A stretch of DNA of 64,000 nt, taken from positions 1-64,000 of the IMG/VR virus record IMGVR_UViG_3300032214_000715, one strand, 5' to 3'. Under the pieces are notes generated by a model, which was not told the origin of the DNA, made no database searches, and worked only from the letters and a program-made list of their open reading frames with translations. Numbering within the stretch: position 1 is the first letter of the stretch; each line of letters opens with the position of its first letter. The translations under genes were made by a program, and so were the position numbers. Positions 53,460 to 63,564 of the stretch are shown here, one piece after another.

Positions 53460-54194
53460 TTACATCAGACTGATGTTTTCTTTTTGTGTTTCTTTAGAAA
53501 ATACCGCTAACTGAGTTCTGTTACGAACTTTGTGCTTCTTTAGCAATGCGCTCATGTGTAATTTAACAGTGCTCTCACTTATGTTTAACATCTTGGCAAT
53601 AATCTTGTTACTGACGCCGCGATTGGCCACAAGATTAAAAATCTGACGCTGACGAGGAGTCAGATTAATAGTATTTTTAGATTCGTTGCTTTTTTTCTTT
53701 CGTGACAAAATTTCTTGTACTTGCGAAGGAATCGTAGTATCATTATTAATGATTGCTCGTAAAGACTTTGCGATTTCATCGTCACTAAACCCATCACCTG
53801 TTCTCAGACCAATGAATGAAACCATTGGCAAAGACATTACTTCTTTAATGTACTCGGCGGGTGTTTTTGTTCCCACCAAAATAACAATTTTTGTCTTACG
53901 TTGAACAAAAGCTCCGTTTTCGTCGCGAACTAGCGTACAAGTAAGAAGCGTGTTGATCGTATTAAGTAGAGCAAAAATATCAACATTGTTGACATGATAT
54001 AGCTGCTCCAAGTCAACACTGATATAATCACAGTAAAAATCTTCTTTGCTAAGTAGCGGTAACAGTTCCTTTACTCCGTCTAAAGAAACAAATTCTATTG
54101 GAAATTCTTTTACTAATTTGTCATGTAGACATTGCCCTTGACTAGGATTAATGTCTGGGCAAATTGTAATCATAATTTTGTTATCTTGTGTCAT
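53460..54194 (-). CDS. LuxR-family transcriptional regulator with receiver-like N-domain
   Basis: LTPRQRQIF...SNKIIAKMLNISESTVKLHMS...RNRTQLA. Confidence 0.88.
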   Translation of the reverse strand: MTQDNKIMITICPDINPSQGQCLHDKLVKEFPIEFVSLDGVKELLPLLSKEDFYCDYISVDLEQLYHVNNVDIFALLNTINTLLTCTLVRDENGAFVQRKTKIVILVGTKTPAEYIKEVMSLPMVSFIGLRTGDGFSDDEIAKSLRAIINNDTTIPSQVQEILSRKKKSNESKNTINLTPRQRQIFNLVANRGVSNKIIAKMLNISESTVKLHMSALLKKHKVRNRTQLAVFSKETQKENISLM

Positions 54195-54358
54195 GCTGTA
54201 CTCCCTTGTTTTGTGATGTGCTAAGTATATATGATTATTGTCACTGTGACTAGATATGCCCTGGTACAATATAGACTACAGTAGTAGTACTATTTTTGAC
54301 CAAAAGTAATCTGGTGGCTTATTTTAGTTACGAATAACTGAAGAAAAATTATATAGCG

Positions 54359-56405: not shown

Positions 56406-56477
56406 GATAAATAAAGGTGTAGGTCACGGAATTGGCGTTCCCACCTACTCTAATGCTTACAAGGAGCAATCAGCATG
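56406..56477 (+). promoter_or_regulatory. Late promoter plus structured leader of GIY-YIG gene (copy 2)
   Basis: ATAAATA; GTAGGT/ACCTAC stem; GGAAT/GTTCC inner; TGCT/AGCA over GGAG. Confidence 0.7.
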
Positions 56478-57347
56478 TTTATTTATTACGTTTACGCATA
56501 CCTCAGAAAAGATGGCACACCCTACTACATTGGTAAGGGTAAAGGTTACAGGGCGTGGATAGATCACCGTAAAAAGAAGAATGGAAAACTTATTGGAGTA
56601 TCAACACCAACAGACAGAAGTCGAATAGTTCTTCTAGAGACTAATCTGAGTGAAGTTGGAGCATTGGCGTTGGAGCGTAGATACATCATTTGGTATGGAC
56701 GCAAAGACAACAAGACAGGAATCCTTAGAAACCTTACCAATGGTGGTGAAGGATTGTCAGGAATAGTTAGAGATCCTGTAAAATTTATGGGGGAAAAGAA
56801 TGGAATGTATGGTAAAAATCATACAGAGAAAGTTCGCACTGAGCACTCTCAAAGAATGCTTGGGAACAAGAATGGGTGTGGATGGGAACCTACTCCCGAG
56901 CAGCTTGCCAAGATGAGGCATCGTGCAAAAAACAGAGAACAGAAAGTCTGTCCTCATTGTGGAAAGAGTGTCAGCGGATCAAATTACACACGTTGGCATG
57001 GTGACAACTGTAGAGTTATTTTAGATCCAGTATTACTGGAGAAACGTGGATCAAAGTTTAGAAAAGAAAAGATAAAGTGCTTATATTGCGATGGTGAATT
57101 TATACCATGTAGGTATCATGAACTGCACGGGGAAAATTGTTCTAAAAGTCCTTCTAAAATTGCCACGCGAGAAGAGAATAGAAGAAGATCGTTAGACTTG
57201 AGACCAGAGTATACATGTGAATACTGTAGTATAAAGACAAAGACCCGCACCAACTACACGAGATGGCACGGGCCTAATTGCAAGGACAGTATCAGATGTC
57301 GTAGCGAGGAATCATTACTGCCTTCCTCATTACAAATTCTGGGGTGA
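56475..57347 (+). CDS. GIY-YIG-like homing endonuclease with CxxC-NYxRWHGxxC zinc repeats
   Basis: [18 protein letters not shown]; NLTNGGEG; three C-terminal Zn repeats. Confidence 0.8.
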
Positions 57348-58719
57348 ACTGCTCACTGTCTCCACTCAGCACTGCACTAGCGATAGCAGGTGAGAACCCA
57401 CTAACCAGTGCAACACCGCTCTCATCAAACTTGGCAGGTGCATGTCCTGAATGGTTTAGGTTCCAGAAAACGATGCGGGGCACTTGATAACCTGCTTCTT
57501 CGTATTGACGAGCGATCATTTGCATGGCACTCTCGGATACGCTTACAGACTGGTCAAAATTCATGTCACTTAGGATCACCAGAGTTCCTGGCATCTCAGA
57601 CTGACCTACGCCAGCATTGACTGCGGTTCTCAGGATCAACTCCATGGCCGCGTTCAAGTTGGTGTTCATGCCCCAATCACTCCTAGTCATCTGAGCGATC
57701 TTCTCGGTGATAGTGCCCTTCAAACGCAGCAGTTCCGGTTGTGCGCTGAAGGTCAGAAAACAGTCCTTGAATACGCCACTGTTCTTGTCAGCGAAGTACA
57801 GACCAAGACTCACAGCAACATCCATGCAAGACAACTCGCTCTTACTGTTACGACCACCGACCTTACAGGTCATACTGCCACTAACGTCTACTAGAGGCAG
57901 AACACTAGCGTCACCGATGAAGTCGGGCAGTGCAGCCCACTGTGCTTCAATCACCGCGATCTCATCAGCAGAGACTTCACTCTCACGCATCCAAGTGTCG
58001 ATAGGGGTGATGTGACCCTTCAACACATCATAGGGGTATACTGCGCTGGCCGAAATTTTTACACCGTCCTCACCCTTGATCAGAGACTGGACATACTCAC
58101 TGTACTTGGCTGTGTTGCGACCAAAAGCCTTCTTGTAACGTGCGTGAGCAACACTAGGAACATGGCTGAAGTTGATGTTGTCCCAGTCCTTGGCGCACAT
58201 CTGGGACTCCACGACCTTAGTCAGACCGACCAACATCTTGCGGTAAGCCTTAGGGCTCAGACCCATGAAGACGCGCAGTTCCAGTGCCAGCGGACCCTGA
58301 CGAGGCATCCACTTCGCGCACAGTCCGTTTCCAGACTTCAGCGCATCACTGATCATGGTGTATGCTACCTGCTTGAGTTCAGGTGTCATTACGACCAACA
58401 GATCGTCCCAACGGCCCAACTCAGGCAACTTGGTCATAAGACGCATTGCGTCCTGTGGGTAGTACTGCTCCATGTGAAGCAGAATGTCCCGAACCAGTTG
58501 TCGTTCGCCGCTACCACCACGAGCATCACGGATCCACTGTACCACGCGCAGTGTCAGTTCGCTGTCCTGCACGTATGCAGCTACGAACTTAGGCACAATG
58601 CCAACACCACGGGTAGCGCCGTAGAACAGGTCTATCACAGCGTTAGCGGTAGCCACACGTGCTACCATACCGTTCTCGGTAACGGTCAGTTGATTGTCGA
58701 TTGCTTGTGCGAATGTCAT
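57292..58719 (-). CDS. DUF2828-type vWA protein, Ro60/TROVE-related
   Basis: [44 protein letters not shown]. Confidence 0.85.
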
Positions 58720-58734
58720 TTATTTTTTCCTTTC

Positions 58735-58823
58735 AACAGATTAGTTATCATTGGTCCTATCACGGTCTCCAGCCAGATTCGGGCTTTTTTATAGTGATTA
58801 AAATTGGTTGCTGGATCTAATCT
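58735..58823 (-). ncRNA. Y-RNA-like element A
   Basis: AGAUUAG-AUC-CAGCAA...CUAAUCU-GUU. Confidence 0.6.
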
Positions 58824-58872
58824 AAGAACTTATTATATGTTACTTACTATTTTTAGTCTACAAATTCGGATA

Positions 58873-58989
58873 AACTGTATACGTTTCTTGCCTGCTGCTC
58901 TGCCGACTGAGCTACATCTCACATTTGAGAGATGGAAGGACTCGAACCTTCGACACACTGGGTGATTTAATCGTTGCTGTATGTATACA
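58873..58989 (-). ncRNA. YrlA-like Y RNA (circularly permuted tRNA mimic), element B
   Basis: UGUAUAC-AUA-CAGCAA; T arm GAAGG-UUCGAGU-CCUUC; looped acceptor CAUCUC/GAGAUG; D arm GCUC-AGUCGGCA-GAGC; GUAUACA-GUU. Confidence 0.75.
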
Positions 58990-59129
58990 AAAATATAACA
59001 GGATGATCGATACGGGTATTTTATTTCTCTGCTTGCCCCTTACACTAAAGGATTTTGTATCACAAGCACAGTCTAAATCGTTTAGACCCGATCCTAGTAT
59101 CTTGACTAGACACAAAGTTGGCTAACCCC

Positions 59130-59187
59130 AACAGGACGATTAGTTGACTAATCAGTTCAGAGTATTTTAAATTGCCGAAATCATCCT
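59130..59187 (-). ncRNA. Y-RNA-like element C (alternative distal 3' partner at 58997-59007)
   Basis: AGGAUGAU-UU-CGGCAA...AUCGUCCU-GUU. Confidence 0.55.
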
Positions 59188-59195
59188 AATCAAAT

Positions 59196-59348
59196 AACGG
59201 GATAGTTGTTGCCTTCTTTTATTCAAGTGAGAAATGCTAGACTCACCTCGACCGGATAAACATAAAACGCTTCACAGGTTGCCCTCTGCAAGATATGTCT
59301 ACTTTGCCCAGTCCATCCATAATTTTATGAATTTGCTGTACCTATCCC
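59196..59348 (-). ncRNA. Y-RNA-like element D
   Basis: GGGAUAG-GUA-CAGCAA...CUAUCCC-GUU. Confidence 0.6.
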
Positions 59349-59381
59349 AAATCTCTTTGTTGTTACGATAGATGTATTATG

Positions 59382-59594
59382 TCATCGTTTACTATTCATT
59401 TCAAGCATTTTGGATGACTTGCTTTCTTTGACCTTGACCAAATTGGCAAGATTCATCCAAACTAAACGCTGATTGTCCGGGCGATGAACCTCAACGAAGT
59501 CCACGCCATCTACACGCCTACGATTATCAAAATTCTCGCATACCCATACTTCACCGGTACGTGGATTAGATAGAGTCACTGACTTTGCCTTCAT
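59382..59594 (-). CDS. Hypothetical protein
   Basis: AAGGAG SD; MKAKSVTLSNPRTGEVW. Confidence 0.55.
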   Translation of the reverse strand: MKAKSVTLSNPRTGEVWVCENFDNRRRVDGVDFVEVHRPDNQRLVWMNLANLVKVKESKSSKMLEMNSKR

Positions 59595-59604
59595 AGTTTT
59601 CTCC

Positions 59605-60090
59605 TTACGCTGTCTGACGACGAGATTCCAAACTTTTGAATTGATCCGCAGCATACGATGCCGCAAAAGCACGAGGTTTCACAAATGGAATTACTCCACA
59701 CATGCCCTTAACGTAACCAATGGCTTCATTGATAACGAGATTGCTATTGTGAAACTCACTTGGATTTAGGTCCAAGTGAACTTCTACCTCAAATGGCACT
59801 TCCTTGGCTAGTTCTAGATAAAGATTGGCTACACGATATACTTCATTCATTAATCGCATGCGTGGCTTATCCGCACGTTGATCGTAGTCACGTTCACGAT
59901 CCACTGCGCCGAAAATCTTACAACCATTATTGCCGTTTACGTGAATAACTACAGCGGTAATATAATCAGCATACCAGACATTGTTATGCTGTAGGCGTTC
60001 ACTGTCACAGCCAATATAAATTTTAGTGTTGTCGGACAGATTTTCACAAAACGTCACAACTTCATCAATGTCAATATGCTTCTTATACAT
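59605..60090 (-). CDS. RNase H-like YkuK (DUF458) family protein
   Basis: IYIGCDS, RLMNEV, EVHLDLNP, KP.AFAAS.AAD. Confidence 0.8.
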   Translation of the reverse strand: MYKKHIDIDEVVTFCENLSDNTKIYIGCDSERLQHNNVWYADYITAVVIHVNGNNGCKIFGAVDRERDYDQRADKPRMRLMNEVYRVANLYLELAKEVPFEVEVHLDLNPSEFHNSNLVINEAIGYVKGMCGVIPFVKPRAFAASYAADQFKSLESRRQTA

Positions 60091-60101: not shown

Positions 60102-60389
60102 TTAAAAAACATCATGCCTCTTTGGTTTATTTCTTTCACTTCTATCTTTGATTTTACCTAGATACTCTCGCCCAACTGCGCCAGACTCAATATCATCAAA
60201 TACAATCTTAGTGGGAATACTTTTTAGCTTGCGCTGCTCCAAATACGTAGACACGTTCATGTCACTGTACTTCATAGCATCGTCTTCTTGCTTACGCACA
60301 CGATGTATTTCCCTCAATCGCTCACTGGCAACTAGAATCAAATCGAATCTGTTGCCGATGCGATCACACATTTTATCAAAATCATTCAT
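60102..60389 (-). CDS. rpoZ: RNA polymerase omega subunit (RpoZ) homolog
   Basis: IGNRFDLILVASERLREI matches RpoZ N-terminal signature; TTGACA-16-TATAAT promoter 60415-60442. Confidence 0.65.
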   Translation of the reverse strand: MNDFDKMCDRIGNRFDLILVASERLREIHRVRKQEDDAMKYSDMNVSTYLEQRKLKSIPTKIVFDDIESGAVGREYLGKIKDRSERNKPKRHDVF

Positions 60390-60472
60390 TATTAGTCCTA
60401 TCAAAGTTATTATAATTATACACAAGCATCAACCGATGTCAAGCAGTATTTTACTATTTACTAAATAATAGT

Positions 60473-60841: not shown

Positions 60842-60931
60842 TGGCGGATAGTGTGAGATTCGAACTCACGATAGAATTTCTCCTATGACGGTTTAGTAGA
60901 CCGTTGGTTTCAGCCGCTCACCCAACTATCC
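60842..60931 (-). tRNA. tRNA-Ser, anticodon ACU, class II
   Basis: GGATAGT/ACTATCC acceptor, G73-CCA, ACGGT-CTACTAA-ACCGT, long variable arm, GTGAG-TTCGAAT-CTCAC. Confidence 0.9.
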
Positions 60932-60974: not shown

Positions 60975-61577
60975 CTACACAGTTTGTTGACGCTGTTCTA
61001 ACTTTTTGCGAAGCATGGTATGAATGCCAGGATTCACTCTGAGTACATCAGCCATAAGTTTATGCCTAATAAAATTCCTAGTATAACGAGTATCGTTATT
61101 AGAATGATCCTCAATCCACTTAACATTTTTGCGTCTCGCCCAATCTTCTAATTCATACTTTCTATTTAATAGAAATGGTCTGATAACGTTGCCACGACGA
61201 TATGGGATCAAGCTACTGGTTCCATGTAAACTACTCCACACCCAAGTCTCAGCTACATCATCTAAATGATGAGCAGTGACTACAGTATCAAATTGATTTA
61301 GAAAATTATATCGTTCCTCACGCCAATGTTCTTCTGGACTTTGCTCACGATCACGATGAACTTTTGTCATTTCACCAATATGTAATGCTACATTATTTTT
61401 TGAGCAAAAATCAGTTAAAAACTCCTGAGCACGATTACTGTTTTCGGTGTTATGATTAAAGAAAGCAGCATCGACGTTATGATTTCGTTGTAAGAAATCT
61501 AACAATACCATACTGTCAATGCCACCACTAAGTGCCACGGTCAACTTTCTGGGCAATGATCCTAAAACTTTGATCAT
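60975..61577 (-). CDS. tilS: tRNA(Ile)-lysidine synthase, catalytic domain only
   Basis: ALSGGIDS PP-loop, AHHLDD.AET, IRPFL, ED.SN....TRNFIRH. Confidence 0.9.
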   Translation of the reverse strand: MIKVLGSLPRKLTVALSGGIDSMVLLDFLQRNHNVDAAFFNHNTENSNRAQEFLTDFCSKNNVALHIGEMTKVHRDREQSPEEHWREERYNFLNQFDTVVTAHHLDDVAETWVWSSLHGTSSLIPYRRGNVIRPFLLNRKYELEDWARRKNVKWIEDHSNNDTRYTRNFIRHKLMADVLRVNPGIHTMLRKKLEQRQQTV

Positions 61578-61658: not shown

Positions 61659-61730
61659 GATAAATAAAAGTGTCAGTCGCGATACGTCAATATCCACTGA
61701 CTCTAACGCTTTTTGGGAGCATCAGCAATG
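61659..61730 (+). promoter_or_regulatory. Late promoter plus structured leader of GIY-YIG gene (copy 3)
   Basis: ATAAATA; GTCAGT/ACTGAC stem; GATA/TATC inner; GCT/AGC over GGAG; CAGCAATG. Confidence 0.7.
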
Positions 61731-62339
61731 TATTTACACTATATCATCTATCGTGTCCAACATAAAAATGGACACTACTATATTGGACGACACGCTACAA
61801 ATAATCTCAACGATGATTATATTGGTAGCGGCACTTGGTCCAGAAGCATAAAAAATCCAAACAATGTTAGCAGAATCATTTTGGAAGTTTGCCAAAATGA
61901 ACAGCACTACATTGAGCGAGAACAATACTATTTGGATTTACATTTTGGCAAGCCTGGATGTATGAACCAAAGTAATAGGGCTACAGGATTTCCCTGCGGT
62001 GAAGCACACCATATGAAACAGCCCAAAAATAGACTCAAACATTCTATTCGCCAAAAGTCTTTAGGTAGTAATCATCATTTTAATACTCCAGAGAATCGCG
62101 AGCGTATGCGTATCAACAACCCCGGATCATTCCCAGAGAATCGTGCTCGTGCCTCTAAACAACTATTAGAAAACAATCCAATGTATGATCCTGTAGCATT
62201 AGCAAAGATAAGCGGTGAAAATCATTGGACAAAAAACAATGCCCACTTAAAAACTTGTGAGCATTGTAGTATTGCCGACATATCCAAATCGAACTACACC
62301 CGATGGCACGGTCCCAAATGTAAGTCTATTACATTGTAG
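61728..62339 (+). CDS. GIY-YIG homing endonuclease-like
   Basis: IIYRVQHKNGHYYIGRH, YIGSG, E.E..Y; C-terminal CEHC...[10 protein letters not shown]. Confidence 0.8.
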   Translation: MYLHYIIYRVQHKNGHYYIGRHATNNLNDDYIGSGTWSRSIKNPNNVSRIILEVCQNEQHYIEREQYYLDLHFGKPGCMNQSNRATGFPCGEAHHMKQPKNRLKHSIRQKSLGSNHHFNTPENRERMRINNPGSFPENRARASKQLLENNPMYDPVALAKISGENHWTKNNAHLKTCEHCSIADISKSNYTRWHGPKCKSITL

Positions 62340-62931
62340 GACCGTTTCCACTCTTAAAGCCCACAGAGCCACCTTGTTCCGTAATCCTCTTTAAGGCATC
62401 CTCAAAAAGGATAGGAGCAAAGTCTGTTTGTTCAACACAGGCACACCAGTATCTTGGATCTATCTCATCGCTGTATAAGATTTCACCAGTTCGGGCATCG
62501 ACACCTCTCGCCTTCATAACTCTGTTGGCGTGTAAGTGTCCGTGTATGTTACACGCCATCCTACCAAGGCTTGCTTCGTGGACAGGAATATGACTTAAAA
62601 TAAGTCCATTCATCACATGGTAGGCACGTAATTCTCTAAAGTACTGCCTGTACTCGTCATCACGAAAGATGTCGTGATTACCACGAATCAATACCTTGTC
62701 GCCGTTTAAGCGGGCTAATGTCTTTAAACTCTTACGATTGATAACCACATCGCCTAGGTGATATACCTTATCACTAGGTTTAACCCGTTCGTTCCAAGCC
62801 TTAACCATGTACTCGTCCATTTCTTCAGCGCAACTAAATGGGCGCAGTGAGCTACCATCTTCGCGCTTAAATACGGTACATGTCTTTTCGTGCCCGAAAT
62901 GCGTATCACTAATTAACCATACTGCTGGCAT
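62329..62931 (-). CDS. Calcineurin-like metallophosphoesterase
   Basis: SDTHFGH, HLGD, GNHD, SHIP, HGHLH. Confidence 0.9.
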   Translation of the reverse strand: MPAVWLISDTHFGHEKTCTVFKREDGSSLRPFSCAEEMDEYMVKAWNERVKPSDKVYHLGDVVINRKSLKTLARLNGDKVLIRGNHDIFRDDEYRQYFRELRAYHVMNGLILSHIPVHEASLGRMACNIHGHLHANRVMKARGVDARTGEILYSDEIDPRYWCACVEQTDFAPILFEDALKRITEQGGSVGFKSGNGPTM

Positions 62932-63096: not shown

Positions 63097-63564
63097 TTAC
63101 CTAAAACTCAGTGCTGTAGTACAAATCTTGTGAAAATTTTCTGTATCCTCTTTATACAGATCATGTGCGAATTGAATAAGTTTAAGTTTTTTCTCAATAT
63201 CTTCCTGTTTCTTGTTCTTAGAACGTTCAACGTATGTAGGACTAAGAGTTTCTTTAAAATGCTTCATGTTTCCGGCGTGATTAGTCCACTCTAGATTAGA
63301 AACATCATTATTTGACTTGTTACCATCAATATGATTGACAACATTATATCCTGGCGGGGGCCCCTTCAAAAATGTCATAGCAACGAGACGATGAACTGAA
63401 ATCGTTACTGTTTTGCCGTTTACTGACAGCCCAACTTTGCGATACCCTTGCCAGTAACTGCCATTAATTTCAACTGGTTCGCCTCCTCGTTTAGAGGAAA
63501 ATACTTTTCCACTATTAGTGACAAAGTAACCTGGAAAATTTTTGATTTCTACTGCGTCTTTCAT
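63097..63564 (-). CDS. NUMOD4-HNH endonuclease
   Basis: YFVTNSGKVFS, VHRLVA, NHIDGNKSNNDVSNLEW. Confidence 0.88.
   Translation of the reverse strand: MKDAVEIKNFPGYFVTNSGKVFSSKRGGEPVEINGSYWQGYRKVGLSVNGKTVTISVHRLVAMTFLKGPPPGYNVVNHIDGNKSNNDVSNLEWTNHAGNMKHFKETLSPTYVERSKNKKQEDIEKKLKLIQFAHDLYKEDTENFHKICTTALSFR

What the first reader, a model, noticed from the sequence alone, without database searches (positions are those of the whole stretch)
57292..59348. DUF2828 (Ro60-like) gene fed by an array of four covarying Y-RNA-like ncRNAs
Seen: the 630 bp ORF-free stretch upstream of the DUF2828/vWA gene holds four same-strand elements with one grammar: 5' stem, 2-3 nt, C(A/G)GCAA, variable body, complementary stem, GUU. 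The four closing stems differ in sequence but all pair (AGAUUAG/CUAAUCU, UGUAUAC/GUAUACA, AGGAUGAU/AUCGUCCU, GGGAUAG/CUAUCCC), which is covariation within one genome. Known: bacterial Ro60 (Rsr, TROVE) proteins bind Y RNAs encoded next to them through a conserved terminal helix and tether effectors such as PNPase. Inference: this more distant DUF2828 family protein is a Ro60-like ring with a set of interchangeable RNA partners whose variable bodies recruit different effectors or act as decoys. The RNase H-like YkuK, TilS, tRNA and phosphoesterase genes nearby fit an RNA repair or quality-control role.
Basis: partly seen in the sequence, partly recalled or inferred. Interest (0 to 1): 0.9.

Follow-up and report, generated by a model that had tools for sequence, protein, structure and literature searches.

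The report
Phage Ro60-like protein with Y-RNA array
A large phage encodes a ring-shaped Ro60-like RNA-binding protein preceded by four small structured RNAs that share one docking helix, one of them a tRNA mimic; the same undescribed RNA family sits beside this protein family in phages of many bacterial phyla.

Summary
The full grammar (7-bp stem, 3 nt, CRGCAA, body, complementary stem, GUU) occurs only at 58735-59348 (minus strand) in the 64-kb window. Beside 79 homologous genes it occurs 159 times on the gene strand against once on the other strand. Covariation holds in a non-circular test: 142 of 182 seeds have a perfect partner, against 2 after shuffling.

Element C carries a YrlA-type tRNA-like module (T arm, closed acceptor stem, D arm), and 19 of 23 pairs show compensatory changes. 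The predicted fold of the DUF2828/DUF7788 protein matches only Ro60 structures over its full length, best the Thermus phage phiRo60. No TROVE HMM match was found.

Related arrays lie next to homologs in Listeria A511, Felix O1-like coliphages (Bas63, SUSP1), Campylobacter CP8, and mycobacteriophage Miley16. They also occur in Enterococcus, Bacillus, Staphylococcus (Twort-like), Sinorhizobium and Synechococcus phages.

A canonical TROVE phage locus (Bxz1) uses stem+GCCGAAG instead, so the RNA motif tracks the protein family.

Best reading: a second, orthogonal Ro60-Y RNA system. It is a new variant of a known kind. RNA-protein binding, expression and function are inferred, not shown.

The parts
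57292..58719 (-). Gene for a 475-aa DUF2828/DUF7788 protein (phrog_850, 'RNA-binding protein'). Predicted Ro60-like fold: helical-repeat N-terminal part plus a C-terminal vWA domain with the MIDAS motif DVSGSM.
   Evidence: Pfam DUF7788 1.5e-44 and DUF2828 6e-23. phrog_850 4e-126. D278/S280/S282 invariant in 30 homologs. AF2 model pLDDT 71. Foldseek top five hits are all Ro60 structures: 9KOP E 6.6e-9 TM 0.54, then 9L5Y, 2NVO, 2I91, 1YVR.
58720..58734 (-). 15-nt spacer with a Shine-Dalgarno-like GAAAGGA between the GUU of element D and the start codon.
   Evidence: Sequence. In 40 of 102 homologous loci an element ends 13-26 nt before the start codon.
58735..58823 (-). Element D, 89 nt. AGAUUAG / AUC / CAGCAA ... 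CUAAUCU / GUU.
   Evidence: Grammar scan. Model R1 35.2 bits, E 1.7e-5. Terminal helix present in the MFE fold. Relatives with the same stem in L014 and L019.
58832..58860 (-). Promoter-like site (TAGACT-17-TATAAT) that would start transcription at about the first base of element D.
   Evidence: Consensus scan, 10 of 12 matches. A consensus match only.
58873..58989 (-). Element C, 117 nt. UGUAUAC / AUA / CAGCAA ... GUAUACA / GUU. A YrlA-type Y RNA with a tRNA-like body.
   Evidence: Grammar scan. Model R2 96.1 bits. RNAalifold on 11 members gives terminal stem, T arm, closed acceptor stem and D arm, with 19 of 23 pairs showing compensatory changes. The MFE fold shows the same arms.
58894..58958 (-). 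tRNA-like module inside C: T arm (GGUUCGAGUCC loop region), 6-7-bp acceptor-like stem closed by a loop, and D arm (GCUCAGUCGGCAGAGC).
   Evidence: Rfam YrlA RF02553 34.8 bits, E 1.1e-5, model positions 24-84 of 114. The genuine YrlA of mycobacteriophage Bxz1 scores 32.5 bits over the same model part.
58997..59187 (-). Element B, long form, 191 nt. AGGAUGA / UUU / CGGCAA ... UCAUCCU / GUU. Probably the real extent of B.
   Evidence: Grammar scan. Interior aligns with long elements of L075, L023 and L071. In the MFE fold the long-range helix closes, z -2.6.
59130..59187 (-). Element B, short form, 58 nt, as read by the first stage. Same 5' strand paired with UCGUCCU / GUU (one G.U pair).
   Evidence: Grammar scan. 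Model R1 39 bits, E 2e-6. Fold. Its relation to the long form is unresolved.
59196..59348 (-). Element A, 153 nt. GGGAUAG / GUA / CAGCAA ... CUAUCCC / GUU. Member of a 130-172-nt body class.
   Evidence: Grammar scan. MFE -45.7 kcal/mol, z -3.7, with 0 of 200 shuffles as stable. Aligns with 16 elements of other loci.
59376..59404 (-). Promoter-like site (TTGAAA-17-TGnCATAAT) about 25 nt upstream of element A.
   Evidence: Consensus scan, 10 of 12 matches with a TG extension. A consensus match only.
59605..60090 (-). YkuK-type RNase H-like gene (PF04308), a recurrent neighbour of the system.
   Evidence: Pfam 1.5e-16. A homolog lies within the held flanks in 19 of 86 loci. It follows the homolog directly in KVP40.
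62329..62931 (-). Calcineurin-like metallophosphoesterase gene, a recurrent neighbour.
   Evidence: Pfam Metallophos 1e-7. A homolog lies in 34 of 86 loci.

Best explanation
The locus encodes a phage ribonucleoprotein of the Ro60-Y RNA kind, built from a different protein family and a different RNA recognition motif.

Protein: the DUF2828/DUF7788 protein is a Ro60-like ring of helical repeats closed by a vWA/MIDAS domain.

RNAs: the four upstream RNAs are its Y-RNA equivalents. Each has two parts:
- A constant docking module: a 7-bp terminal helix (consensus A-U, G-C, G-C at its base), 3 nt, single-stranded CAGCAA facing an A-rich 3' strand, and a free 3' GUU.
- A variable body. Bodies fall into classes conserved between phages: short hairpins, a tRNA mimic of YrlA type, and at least two larger classes.

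Proposed mechanism: the RNAs are transcribed with the gene, or with tRNA operons in related phages, and are cut out. The protein binds the docking module, as Ro60 binds the 5' strand motif of Y RNAs. The bodies then either tether the ring to other factors (host PNPase or other RNases, tRNA-handling or RNA-repair enzymes) or gate access to the ring.

Likely role: control of RNA decay or repair during infection, including escape from host defences.

Shown here: the RNA family, its covariation, its strand-specific linkage to the gene across phyla, the tRNA-like module, and the Ro60-like fold.
Inferred: binding, processing, partners and role.
For: Specificity in the window: 5 grammar hits, all at 58735-59348 (minus strand), none elsewhere.

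Linkage to the gene:
- 164 hits on the gene strand against 1 on the other in 80 loci.
- 20 against 0 in 23 independent MAG loci.
- All 114 hits of the tRNA-like model R2 across 778 kb are on the gene strand.
- 77 of 102 loci have an element within 300 nt of the gene.
- In the reverse test, 31 of 67 full-grammar loci found by motif alone hold the gene, against 4 of 52 seed-only loci.

Covariation:
- 142 of 182 seeds have a perfect 7-mer partner plus GUU, against 2 after shuffling the four variable letters.
- 19 of 23 pairs are compensatory in the YrlA-like class.

tRNA-like module: Rfam YrlA E 1e-5.

Protein: Foldseek returns only Ro60 structures over the full length, and the MIDAS motif is conserved.

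Breadth: arrays sit next to homologs in A511, SUSP1, Bas63, CP8, Miley16, ZJGS2, KoopaTroopa, phiM7, BUCT-ZZ01 and a Twort-like phage.

The motif tracks the protein family, not the host. The TROVE phage Bxz1 uses stem+GCCGA(A/G)G, while the DUF2828 phage Miley16, on the same host, uses CAGCAA.

Precedents:
- Ro60 orthologs have adjacent same-strand Y RNAs, at least one of them tRNA-like (PMC4201824).
- phiRo60 binds two upstream Yrl RNAs through CGAA at nt 8-11 and engages host PNPase (PMC12135203).
- Bas63 gp130, 36% identical to the window protein, is Ro60-like and counters a defence system (PMC11482910).
Against: - No transcript, RNA-end or binding data exist for any member.
- The protein has no TROVE HMM match, even at E 10. 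A family profile finds no Ro60 among PDB sequences. hhalign to Bxz1 Ro60 is weak (probability 11%).
- The fold rests on a medium-confidence model (pLDDT 71, TM 0.44-0.54).
- In the PhageMaP preprint gp130 alone, without phage RNAs, restored T7 plaquing on the ppl strain. The RNAs are therefore not needed for that activity.
- KVP40 and GAP32 have the gene but no recognisable element within 3 kb.
- Many elements lie inside tRNA clusters with no copy of the gene in the stretch held.
- The extent of element B is ambiguous.
Confidence: 0.75

Rival explanations
1. The elements are mainly cis-acting leader structures. The protein, or the ribosome, senses the helix next to the Shine-Dalgarno site, so the RNAs set expression of the DUF2828 gene (an autoregulatory operator) rather than acting in trans.
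For: Element D ends 15 nt before the start codon. In 40 of 102 loci an element ends 13-26 nt before the start codon. KVP40 keeps a lone CAGCAA in the leader of its homolog.
Against: In 10 loci the first element starts 10-16 nt after the stop codon. In Miley16, Bas63, SUSP1 and the Twort-like phage the whole array is downstream of the gene. Many copies lie kilobases away in tRNA clusters. Arrays of 2-5 with conserved body classes, including a tRNA mimic, are not expected of an operator. Autoregulation could still be an added function of the last element.
Confidence: 0.1
2. The elements belong to phage tRNA operons (processing spacers, degenerate tRNA genes or tRNA-derived decoys) and work independently of the DUF2828 protein. 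They are neighbours only because that gene tends to sit at tRNA clusters.
For: In related phages, elements lie between tRNA genes on the same strand with about 6-nt spacers. Some bodies are tRNA-like. 36 of 67 motif-found loci show no gene in the stretch held.
Against: The window has one tRNA 1.5 kb away, and the array abuts the gene instead. Miley16 has gene, three elements, then a terminator, with no tRNA in 7 kb. In the complete Bas63 genome all four elements lie in the 1.2 kb next to g130, although the tRNA cluster runs for 5 kb. T4, which has a tRNA cluster and stable RNAs but no such gene, has no element. ARAGORN and the Rfam tRNA model do not call the elements. The constant module is not a tRNA feature.
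Confidence: 0.08
3. The similarity acts at the DNA level: repeats for recombination, homing-endonuclease sites, promoters or terminators, rather than structured RNAs.
For: Homing-endonuclease-like genes flank the locus. U-rich tracts often follow the GUU. Promoter-like sites lie between elements.
Against: The copies differ in sequence but keep base pairing, including G.U pairs, which only make sense in RNA. There is complete strand bias relative to the gene. The paired strands lie 40-230 nt apart, unlike terminators. Conserved T and D arms are present.
Confidence: 0.02

Closest known systems
Bacterial Rsr (Ro60) with YrlA/YrlB Y RNAs (Salmonella, M. smegmatis, Deinococcus Yrn1; Chen et al. 2014, PMC4201824)
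   Same: A ring-shaped Ro60-type protein with several ncRNAs encoded beside it on the same strand. The RNA ends pair into a terminal helix followed by a short conserved 5'-strand motif. At least one RNA carries a permuted tRNA-like domain (T arm, closed acceptor stem, D arm), and shorter RNAs lack it. RNA repair genes lie nearby.
   Different: The protein is not recognised by the TROVE HMM. The 5'-strand motif is N3-CAGCAA rather than GNCGAAN0-1G. There is a fixed 7-bp helix and a free GUU tail. Arrays hold up to 4-5 RNAs with further conserved body classes. The system is encoded by phages and is often embedded in tRNA clusters.
Thermus phage phiLo phiRo60 with Yrl1/Yrl2 (PDB 9KOP, 9L5Y; PMC12135203)
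   Same: It is the best structural match of the predicted protein (E 6.6e-9, TM 0.54, similar length). It is a phage protein with two Y-like RNAs just upstream. The motif starts right after the 5' stem strand (CGAA at nt 8-11).
   Different: phiRo60 was identified as a Ro60 homolog by database search and uses the CGAA motif. Sequence identity to the window protein is 16% in the structural alignment. No tRNA-like member or larger array was reported there.
Mycobacteriophage Bxz1 gp220 (TROVE + vWA_Ro60) with its YrlA
   Same: A phage Ro60 gene with a YrlA-type and a shorter RNA in the 480-nt gap upstream. Its YrlA gets the same sub-threshold Rfam score as window element C (32.5 against 34.8 bits).
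   Different: It has clear TROVE and vWA_Ro60 Pfam matches. The terminal helices are 9-10 bp and are followed directly by GCCGAG or GCCGAAG, with no CAGCAA.
Bas63 (Felixounavirus) gp130, counter of the ppl defence (PhageMaP preprint, PMC11482910)
   Same: It belongs to the same protein family (36% identity, E 4e-95). The authors noted its structural likeness to Ro60 and guessed that neighbouring 'tRNA genes' might be Y RNAs.
   Different: They did not identify the RNAs. Here four unannotated elements of this grammar, one of them YrlA-like, are found at 82072-82909 in gaps between the annotated tRNAs. In their assay gp130 alone was sufficient.
T4 stable RNAs rnaC and rnaD (species 1 and 2) in the tRNA cluster
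   Same: They are small stable RNAs of unknown function, co-encoded and co-processed with phage tRNAs. rnaC ends with a T-arm-like hairpin.
   Different: Neither has the closing helix, CAGCAA or GUU, and T4 has no element by the scan. No DUF2828-family homolog is known to me in T4; this was not tested here.

Membership tests
DUF2828/DUF7788 phage protein family (PF11443, PF25043; phrog_850) | Matches to the family HMMs above their thresholds. | tested here: met
   DUF7788 152 bits (cut-off 27) and DUF2828 82 bits (cut-off 29). phrog_850 E 4e-126. 711 phage records hold a relative.
Ro60 / TROVE family | TROVE domain (PF05731) and Ro60-type vWA (PF25045) recognisable by sequence. | tested here: not met
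   No TROVE hit for any of 30 members at E up to 10, and vWA_Ro60 only weakly in 4 of 30 (best E 0.019). The family profile finds no Ro60 in PDB sequences. hhalign to Bxz1 gp220 gives probability 11%.
Ro60 / TROVE family | Fold: helical-repeat ring closed by a C-terminal vWA domain. | tested here: met
   The Foldseek top five hits are all Ro60 structures, aligned over about 500 columns (E 7e-9 to 4e-6, TM 0.37-0.54). All later hits cover the vWA domain only. The model has medium confidence (pLDDT 71), and ring closure itself was not inspected.
Ro60 / TROVE family | MIDAS motif DxSxS in the vWA domain. | tested here: met
   D278, S280 and S282 are invariant in 30 homologs (DVSGSM). The same motif aligns with that of Bxz1 gp220.
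Ro60 / TROVE family | Binds Y RNA on the outer surface and RNA ends in the central hole. | not testable with these tools
   Needs EMSA, RIP or a structure.
Y RNAs (RNAs bound by Ro60-type proteins) | Encoded beside the protein gene on the same strand, about 50-200 nt, with the ends paired into a terminal helix and a variable internal part. | tested here: met
Y RNAs (RNAs bound by Ro60-type proteins) | Canonical Ro60 recognition motif on the 5' strand (GGUCCGA in animals, GNCGAAN0-1G in bacteria, CGAA in phiLo). | tested here: not met
   The conserved 5'-strand motif is CAGCAA (CGGCAA, CAGCYA in some lineages). The only CGAA in the four window elements is part of the T stem of C.
Y RNAs (RNAs bound by Ro60-type proteins) | Physically bound by the protein. 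| not testable with these tools
   No binding data are available.
YrlA (Rfam RF02553) | Score at or above the Rfam gathering threshold (69 bits). | tested here: not met
   34.8 bits over model positions 24-84. An accepted phage YrlA (Bxz1) also scores only 32.5 bits, so the threshold does not decide the matter for phage members.
YrlA (Rfam RF02553) | Permuted tRNA-like domain: T arm, acceptor-like stem closed by a loop, D arm, enclosed by a terminal helix. | tested here: met
   Rfam alignment. Independent RNAalifold consensus of 11 members, 19 of 23 pairs compensatory. Model R2 finds about 30 loci with such a member.
tRNA genes | Cloverleaf with an anticodon arm, recognised by ARAGORN or the Rfam tRNA model. 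| tested here: not met
   The only tRNA in the window is at 60842-60931. No tRNA call overlaps the elements.

The most novel reading that the evidence does not exclude
DUF2828 proteins and CAGCAA-helix RNAs form a second, orthogonal Ro60-Y RNA system that is far more common in phages than the TROVE one. In it, one ring protein is loaded with a set of 2-5 interchangeable adaptor RNAs: a tRNA mimic plus at least three other conserved body classes. The RNAs are matured by the tRNA-processing machinery. Each adaptor directs the ring to a different host RNA enzyme or defence nuclease, giving a multiplexed counter-defence or RNA-decay hijacking device.
Probability: 0.3. Interest if true: 0.8.

Novelty: new variant of a known kind. 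Interest (0 to 1): 0.66.

Why it matters
Ro60-Y RNA particles are known from animals, about 5% of bacteria and a few phages, and how Y RNAs specify function remains an open question.

This finding gives the Ro60-like phage family (711 of 50,697 phage records, including Felix O1-like phages, A511, CP8, Twort-like phages and Bas63) its missing RNA partners. It shows a recognition code different from that of TROVE proteins. It also shows that the partners come as small libraries of modular RNAs.

It explains unannotated gaps in many phage tRNA clusters.

It makes a published anti-defence phenotype (Bas63 gp130 against ppl) testable at the RNA level in E. coli K-12.

The family is not in Rfam 15, and no paper in the searchable library describes it.

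Tried and rejected
- Rfam at gathering thresholds found only the tRNA. In E-value mode nothing but YrlA matched the elements, in the window and in seven other loci.
- ARAGORN calls none of the elements.
- Megablast of the locus against 50,697 phage records found nothing.
- phmmer and a family profile against PDB sequences found no Ro60. Only the fold comparison did.
- Literature on DUF2828 concerns plants only.
- T4 rnaC and rnaD were checked as possible relatives and rejected.
- Terminator reading: one weak terminator-like hairpin after the short form of B is part of a hairpin-plus-UUUGUGUCUAG block conserved inside long elements, so it was not taken as a terminator.
- GUCGAAG in element C looked like the bacterial Ro60 motif but is the start of the T stem.
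- Model R1, built on short elements, misses long members (A and C in the window), so Python grammar scans and model R2 were used for those.
- The first regex (CRGCAA) missed the Twort-like variant CAGCYA. It was found only with filters off and by eye.
- Supplements of Chen 2014 are not held.
Full report
OBSERVATION. The DUF2828 gene lies on the minus strand at 57292-58719 (475 aa). Read on that strand, the 662 bases upstream hold four elements with one grammar:
- A, 59348..59196
- B, 59187..59130
- C, 58989..58873
- D, 58823..58735

Each has a 7-bp closing helix, 3 nt, CAGCAA (CGGCAA in B), a variable body, the complementary strand and an unpaired GUU.

A script that asks for the whole grammar, G.U pairs allowed, finds it five times in the window. 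All five hits are here and on this strand, although 97 CRGCAA hexamers are present. The fifth hit is a second partner for the 5' strand of B (see below).

The terminal helix forms in every minimum-free-energy fold. A and the long form of B are more stable than shuffles, with z of -3.7 and -2.6.

IS IT MORE THAN CHANCE? Eighty viral contigs encoding relatives of the protein (54-63% identity, plus the window's own 239-kb contig) were fetched with the gene on the plus strand.
- The same scan gives 164 hits on the gene strand and 1 on the other.
- Pairing was part of that scan, so a non-circular test was also made. Of 182 places that merely read AGR-N4-N3-CRGCAA on the gene strand, 142 have a perfectly complementary 7-mer followed by GUU within 260 nt. 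After shuffling the four variable stem letters, 2 do. On the opposite strand, 0 of 9 do.
- In 23 further loci from MAG contigs the count is 20 against 0.
- In the reverse direction, 119 viral stretches were fetched by a 14-base seed of the RNA alone. Of these, 67 have the full grammar and 31 of those hold the gene in the short stretch held. Only 4 of the 52 seed-only stretches hold it.
- In 77 of 102 loci an element lies within 300 nt of the gene. In 40 loci one ends 13-26 nt before the start codon (15 nt in the window). In 10 loci one starts 10-16 nt after the stop codon.

ANATOMY. From 284 distinct elements the constant module reads as follows:

UUUU / A-G-G-A-U-N-N / (G/U)-U-N / CAGCAA / A-rich ... 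A-rich / N-N-A-U-C-C-U / GUU / U-rich

The last two to four helix pairs vary freely with compensation, while the base of the helix is nearly fixed. CAGCAA faces an A-rich 3' strand, so it is probably single-stranded in an internal loop.

Bodies fall into classes shared between phages:
- hairpins of 52-68 nt (the short form of B)
- a 111-135-nt tRNA-like class (C)
- a 130-172-nt class (A)
- a 188-240-nt class (the long form of B)
- an 87-104-nt class (D)

For the tRNA-like class, RNAalifold on 11 members from seven phage groups predicts the terminal helix, a T arm with GGUUCGANUCC, a 7-bp acceptor-like stem closed by a loop, and a D arm. Of the 23 pairs, 19 show compensatory changes. Rfam's YrlA model matches this part of C (34.8 bits, E 1e-5).

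A covariance model of this class (R2) gives 114 hits at E <= 0.01 across 778 kb, all on the gene strand. About 30 sources have a full tRNA-like member.

ELEMENT B. The strand AGGAUGAU pairs either with AUCGUCCU-GUU (58-nt form) or, perfectly, with AUCAUCCU-GUU 133 nt further on (191-nt form). The interior of the long form contains a hairpin followed by UUUGUGUCUAGUCRAGAUACUAGGAUCG. This block is shared with long elements of L075, L023 and L071. The long form is therefore real, and the status of the short form is unresolved.

THE PROTEIN.
- Pfam sees DUF2828 and DUF7788 only. PHROGs calls the family 'RNA-binding protein'.
- No TROVE match appears even at E 10, and a family profile finds no Ro60 among PDB sequences.
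- An AlphaFold2 model from 30 homologs (pLDDT 71, pTM 0.68) was compared with the PDB. The five best hits are all Ro60 structures aligned over the whole length: Thermus phage phiRo60 (9KOP, E 6.6e-9, TM 0.54; 9L5Y), Deinococcus Rsr (2NVO) and Xenopus Ro60 (2I91, 1YVR). Everything after them matches only the vWA domain.
- The MIDAS motif DVSGSM is invariant.
- Some depositors already annotate relatives as 'Ro-like RNA binding protein'.

BREADTH. tblastn finds the family in 711 of 50,697 phage records. Arrays of the same grammar lie beside the gene in these phages:
- Listeria phage A511: three elements upstream, tails GUG/GUA
- Synechococcus phage BUCT-ZZ01
- Mycobacteriophage Miley16: gene, three elements (the middle one YrlA-like), then a terminator
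- Coliphages SUSP1 and Bas63
- Campylobacter phage CP8
- Enterococcus phage ZJGS2
- Bacillus phage KoopaTroopa
- Sinorhizobium phage phiM7
- A Twort-like Staphylococcus phage: three elements downstream, behind a promoter, with the hexamer CAGCCA or CAGCUA

 No element was seen within 3 kb of the gene in KVP40 or GAP32. Their whole genomes were not scanned.

BAS63 CENSUS. In the complete Bas63 genome a relaxed scan gives 13 hits. Four have the family features, and all four lie at 82072-82909, in gaps between annotated tRNAs just downstream of g130. The last one is YrlA-like.

CONTRAST WITH THE CANONICAL SYSTEM. Mycobacteriophage Bxz1 gp220 is a true TROVE + vWA_Ro60 protein. The gap upstream of it holds a YrlA and a shorter RNA. 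Their 9-10-bp terminal helices are followed directly by GCCGAG or GCCGAAG, the known Ro60 motif, and there is no CAGCAA. Miley16 infects the same host, carries the DUF2828-type protein and uses CAGCAA. The RNA motif therefore follows the protein family, which is what a protein-RNA recognition pair predicts. The genuine Bxz1 YrlA scores 32.5 bits on Rfam's model, like element C, so failing the 69-bit threshold says little.

CONTEXT.
- In related phages many elements sit inside large tRNA clusters (30-38 tRNAs) on the tRNA strand. They are often about 6 nt from a tRNA end, which suggests co-transcription and maturation with tRNAs.
- In the window two promoter-like sites precede A and D.
- Recurrent neighbours are a YkuK-type RNase H-like gene (19 of 86 loci) and a metallophosphoesterase (34 of 86).
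- RtcB lies near the A511 homolog and an RNA ligase near the GAP32 homolog.
- TilS is not a recurrent neighbour.

MECHANISM. Established knowledge:
- Ro60 binds a short motif on the 5' strand of the terminal helix of Y RNAs.
- Bacterial Y RNAs tether the ring to PNPase and gate its cavity.
- At least one Y RNA per species is a tRNA mimic (PMC4201824).
- phiRo60 binds two upstream RNAs through CGAA at nt 8-11 and damps host PNPase (PMC12135203).

The window locus has the same architecture, with a different protein family and motif. I infer that the protein docks on helix + CAGCAA + GUU, and that the bodies act as adaptors or gates.

A role in counter-defence is suggested by Bas63 gp130 (36% identical), which counters the ppl system (PMC11482910). 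That assay worked with the protein alone, so the RNAs may modulate or widen the function rather than being required for it.

RIVALS.
- A purely cis-acting operator is contradicted by downstream and distant copies, but autoregulation by the last element remains possible.
- A protein-independent role in tRNA operons is contradicted by Miley16, the window, the Bas63 census and the T4 negative control.
- DNA-level repeats are contradicted by compensatory and G.U pairing and by the total strand bias.

NOVELTY. The concept is known: a Ro60 homolog with adjacent Y RNAs, including in phages. The Ro60-likeness of this protein family is known from annotations and one preprint, whose authors guessed that the partners were among annotated tRNA genes. 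The following appear in neither Rfam 15 nor the searchable literature:
- the RNA family itself
- its recognition module
- its body classes
- its distribution

I rate it a new variant of a known kind.

LIMITS.
- There are no expression or binding data.
- The model confidence is medium.
- Alignments of the larger classes are too rough for internal structures.
- Motif scans were tuned to CAGCAA and miss variants.
- E-values of the home-made models are rough.

Noticed in passing
L084 1477-2028 (Listeria phage A511): A ROOL RNA match (RF03087, 87.5 bits, just under the 99.1-bit threshold) lies among tRNAs about 1 kb upstream of the A511 DUF2828 homolog and its three CAGCAA elements.
   Followed up: no
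window 60842-60931 (-) and 60975-61577 (-): The only tRNA in the window is a tRNA-Ser with the unusual anticodon ACU. It lies next to a short (200-aa) TilS-like PP-loop ATPase gene.
   Followed up: no
window 56475-57347 (+), 61713-62339 (+), 63097-63564 (-): Three homing-endonuclease-like ORFs lie within 7 kb. One has four repeated CxxC...RWHGxNC units, is convergent with the DUF2828 gene and overlaps its 3' end by 56 nt. The others are GIY-YIG-like and HNH_3.
   Followed up: partly
L213 32694-32909 (Bas63 82694-82909): Two annotated reverse-strand mini-ORFs (bas63_0137, bas63_0138) lie over two of the RNA elements and are probably not genes.
   Followed up: partly
L082 2960-2995 (Vibrio phage KVP40): The leader of the KVP40 homolog has a lone CAGCAA 24 nt before the start codon but no closing helix. 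The gene is followed directly by a YkuK-type (PF04308) gene.
   Followed up: no
L208 6606-6940 (Twort-like Staphylococcus phage): Three elements downstream of the homolog use CAGCCA or CAGCUA instead of CAGCAA, with tails GAU, GAU and GUU. The hexamer is therefore CAGCNA more generally, and scans for CAGCAA undercount.
   Followed up: partly
L133, L089, L164 (viral contigs): Very large phage tRNA clusters (38, 30 and 36 tRNAs in 9-14 kb) carry several CAGCAA elements interspersed on the tRNA strand, often about 6 nt from a tRNA end.
   Followed up: partly
window 59130-59187 against 58997-59187 (-): Element B has two alternative 3' partners for one 5' strand, each followed by GUU. It could be a nested element, alternative folds, or a fusion of a short element with a truncated long one.
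   Followed up: partly
window 53460-54269 (-) and 60102-60425 (-): A sigma-factor-like gene (GerE / sigma-70 region 4) and a small ORF with a weak RNA polymerase omega (Rpb6) match lie near the locus.
   Followed up: no
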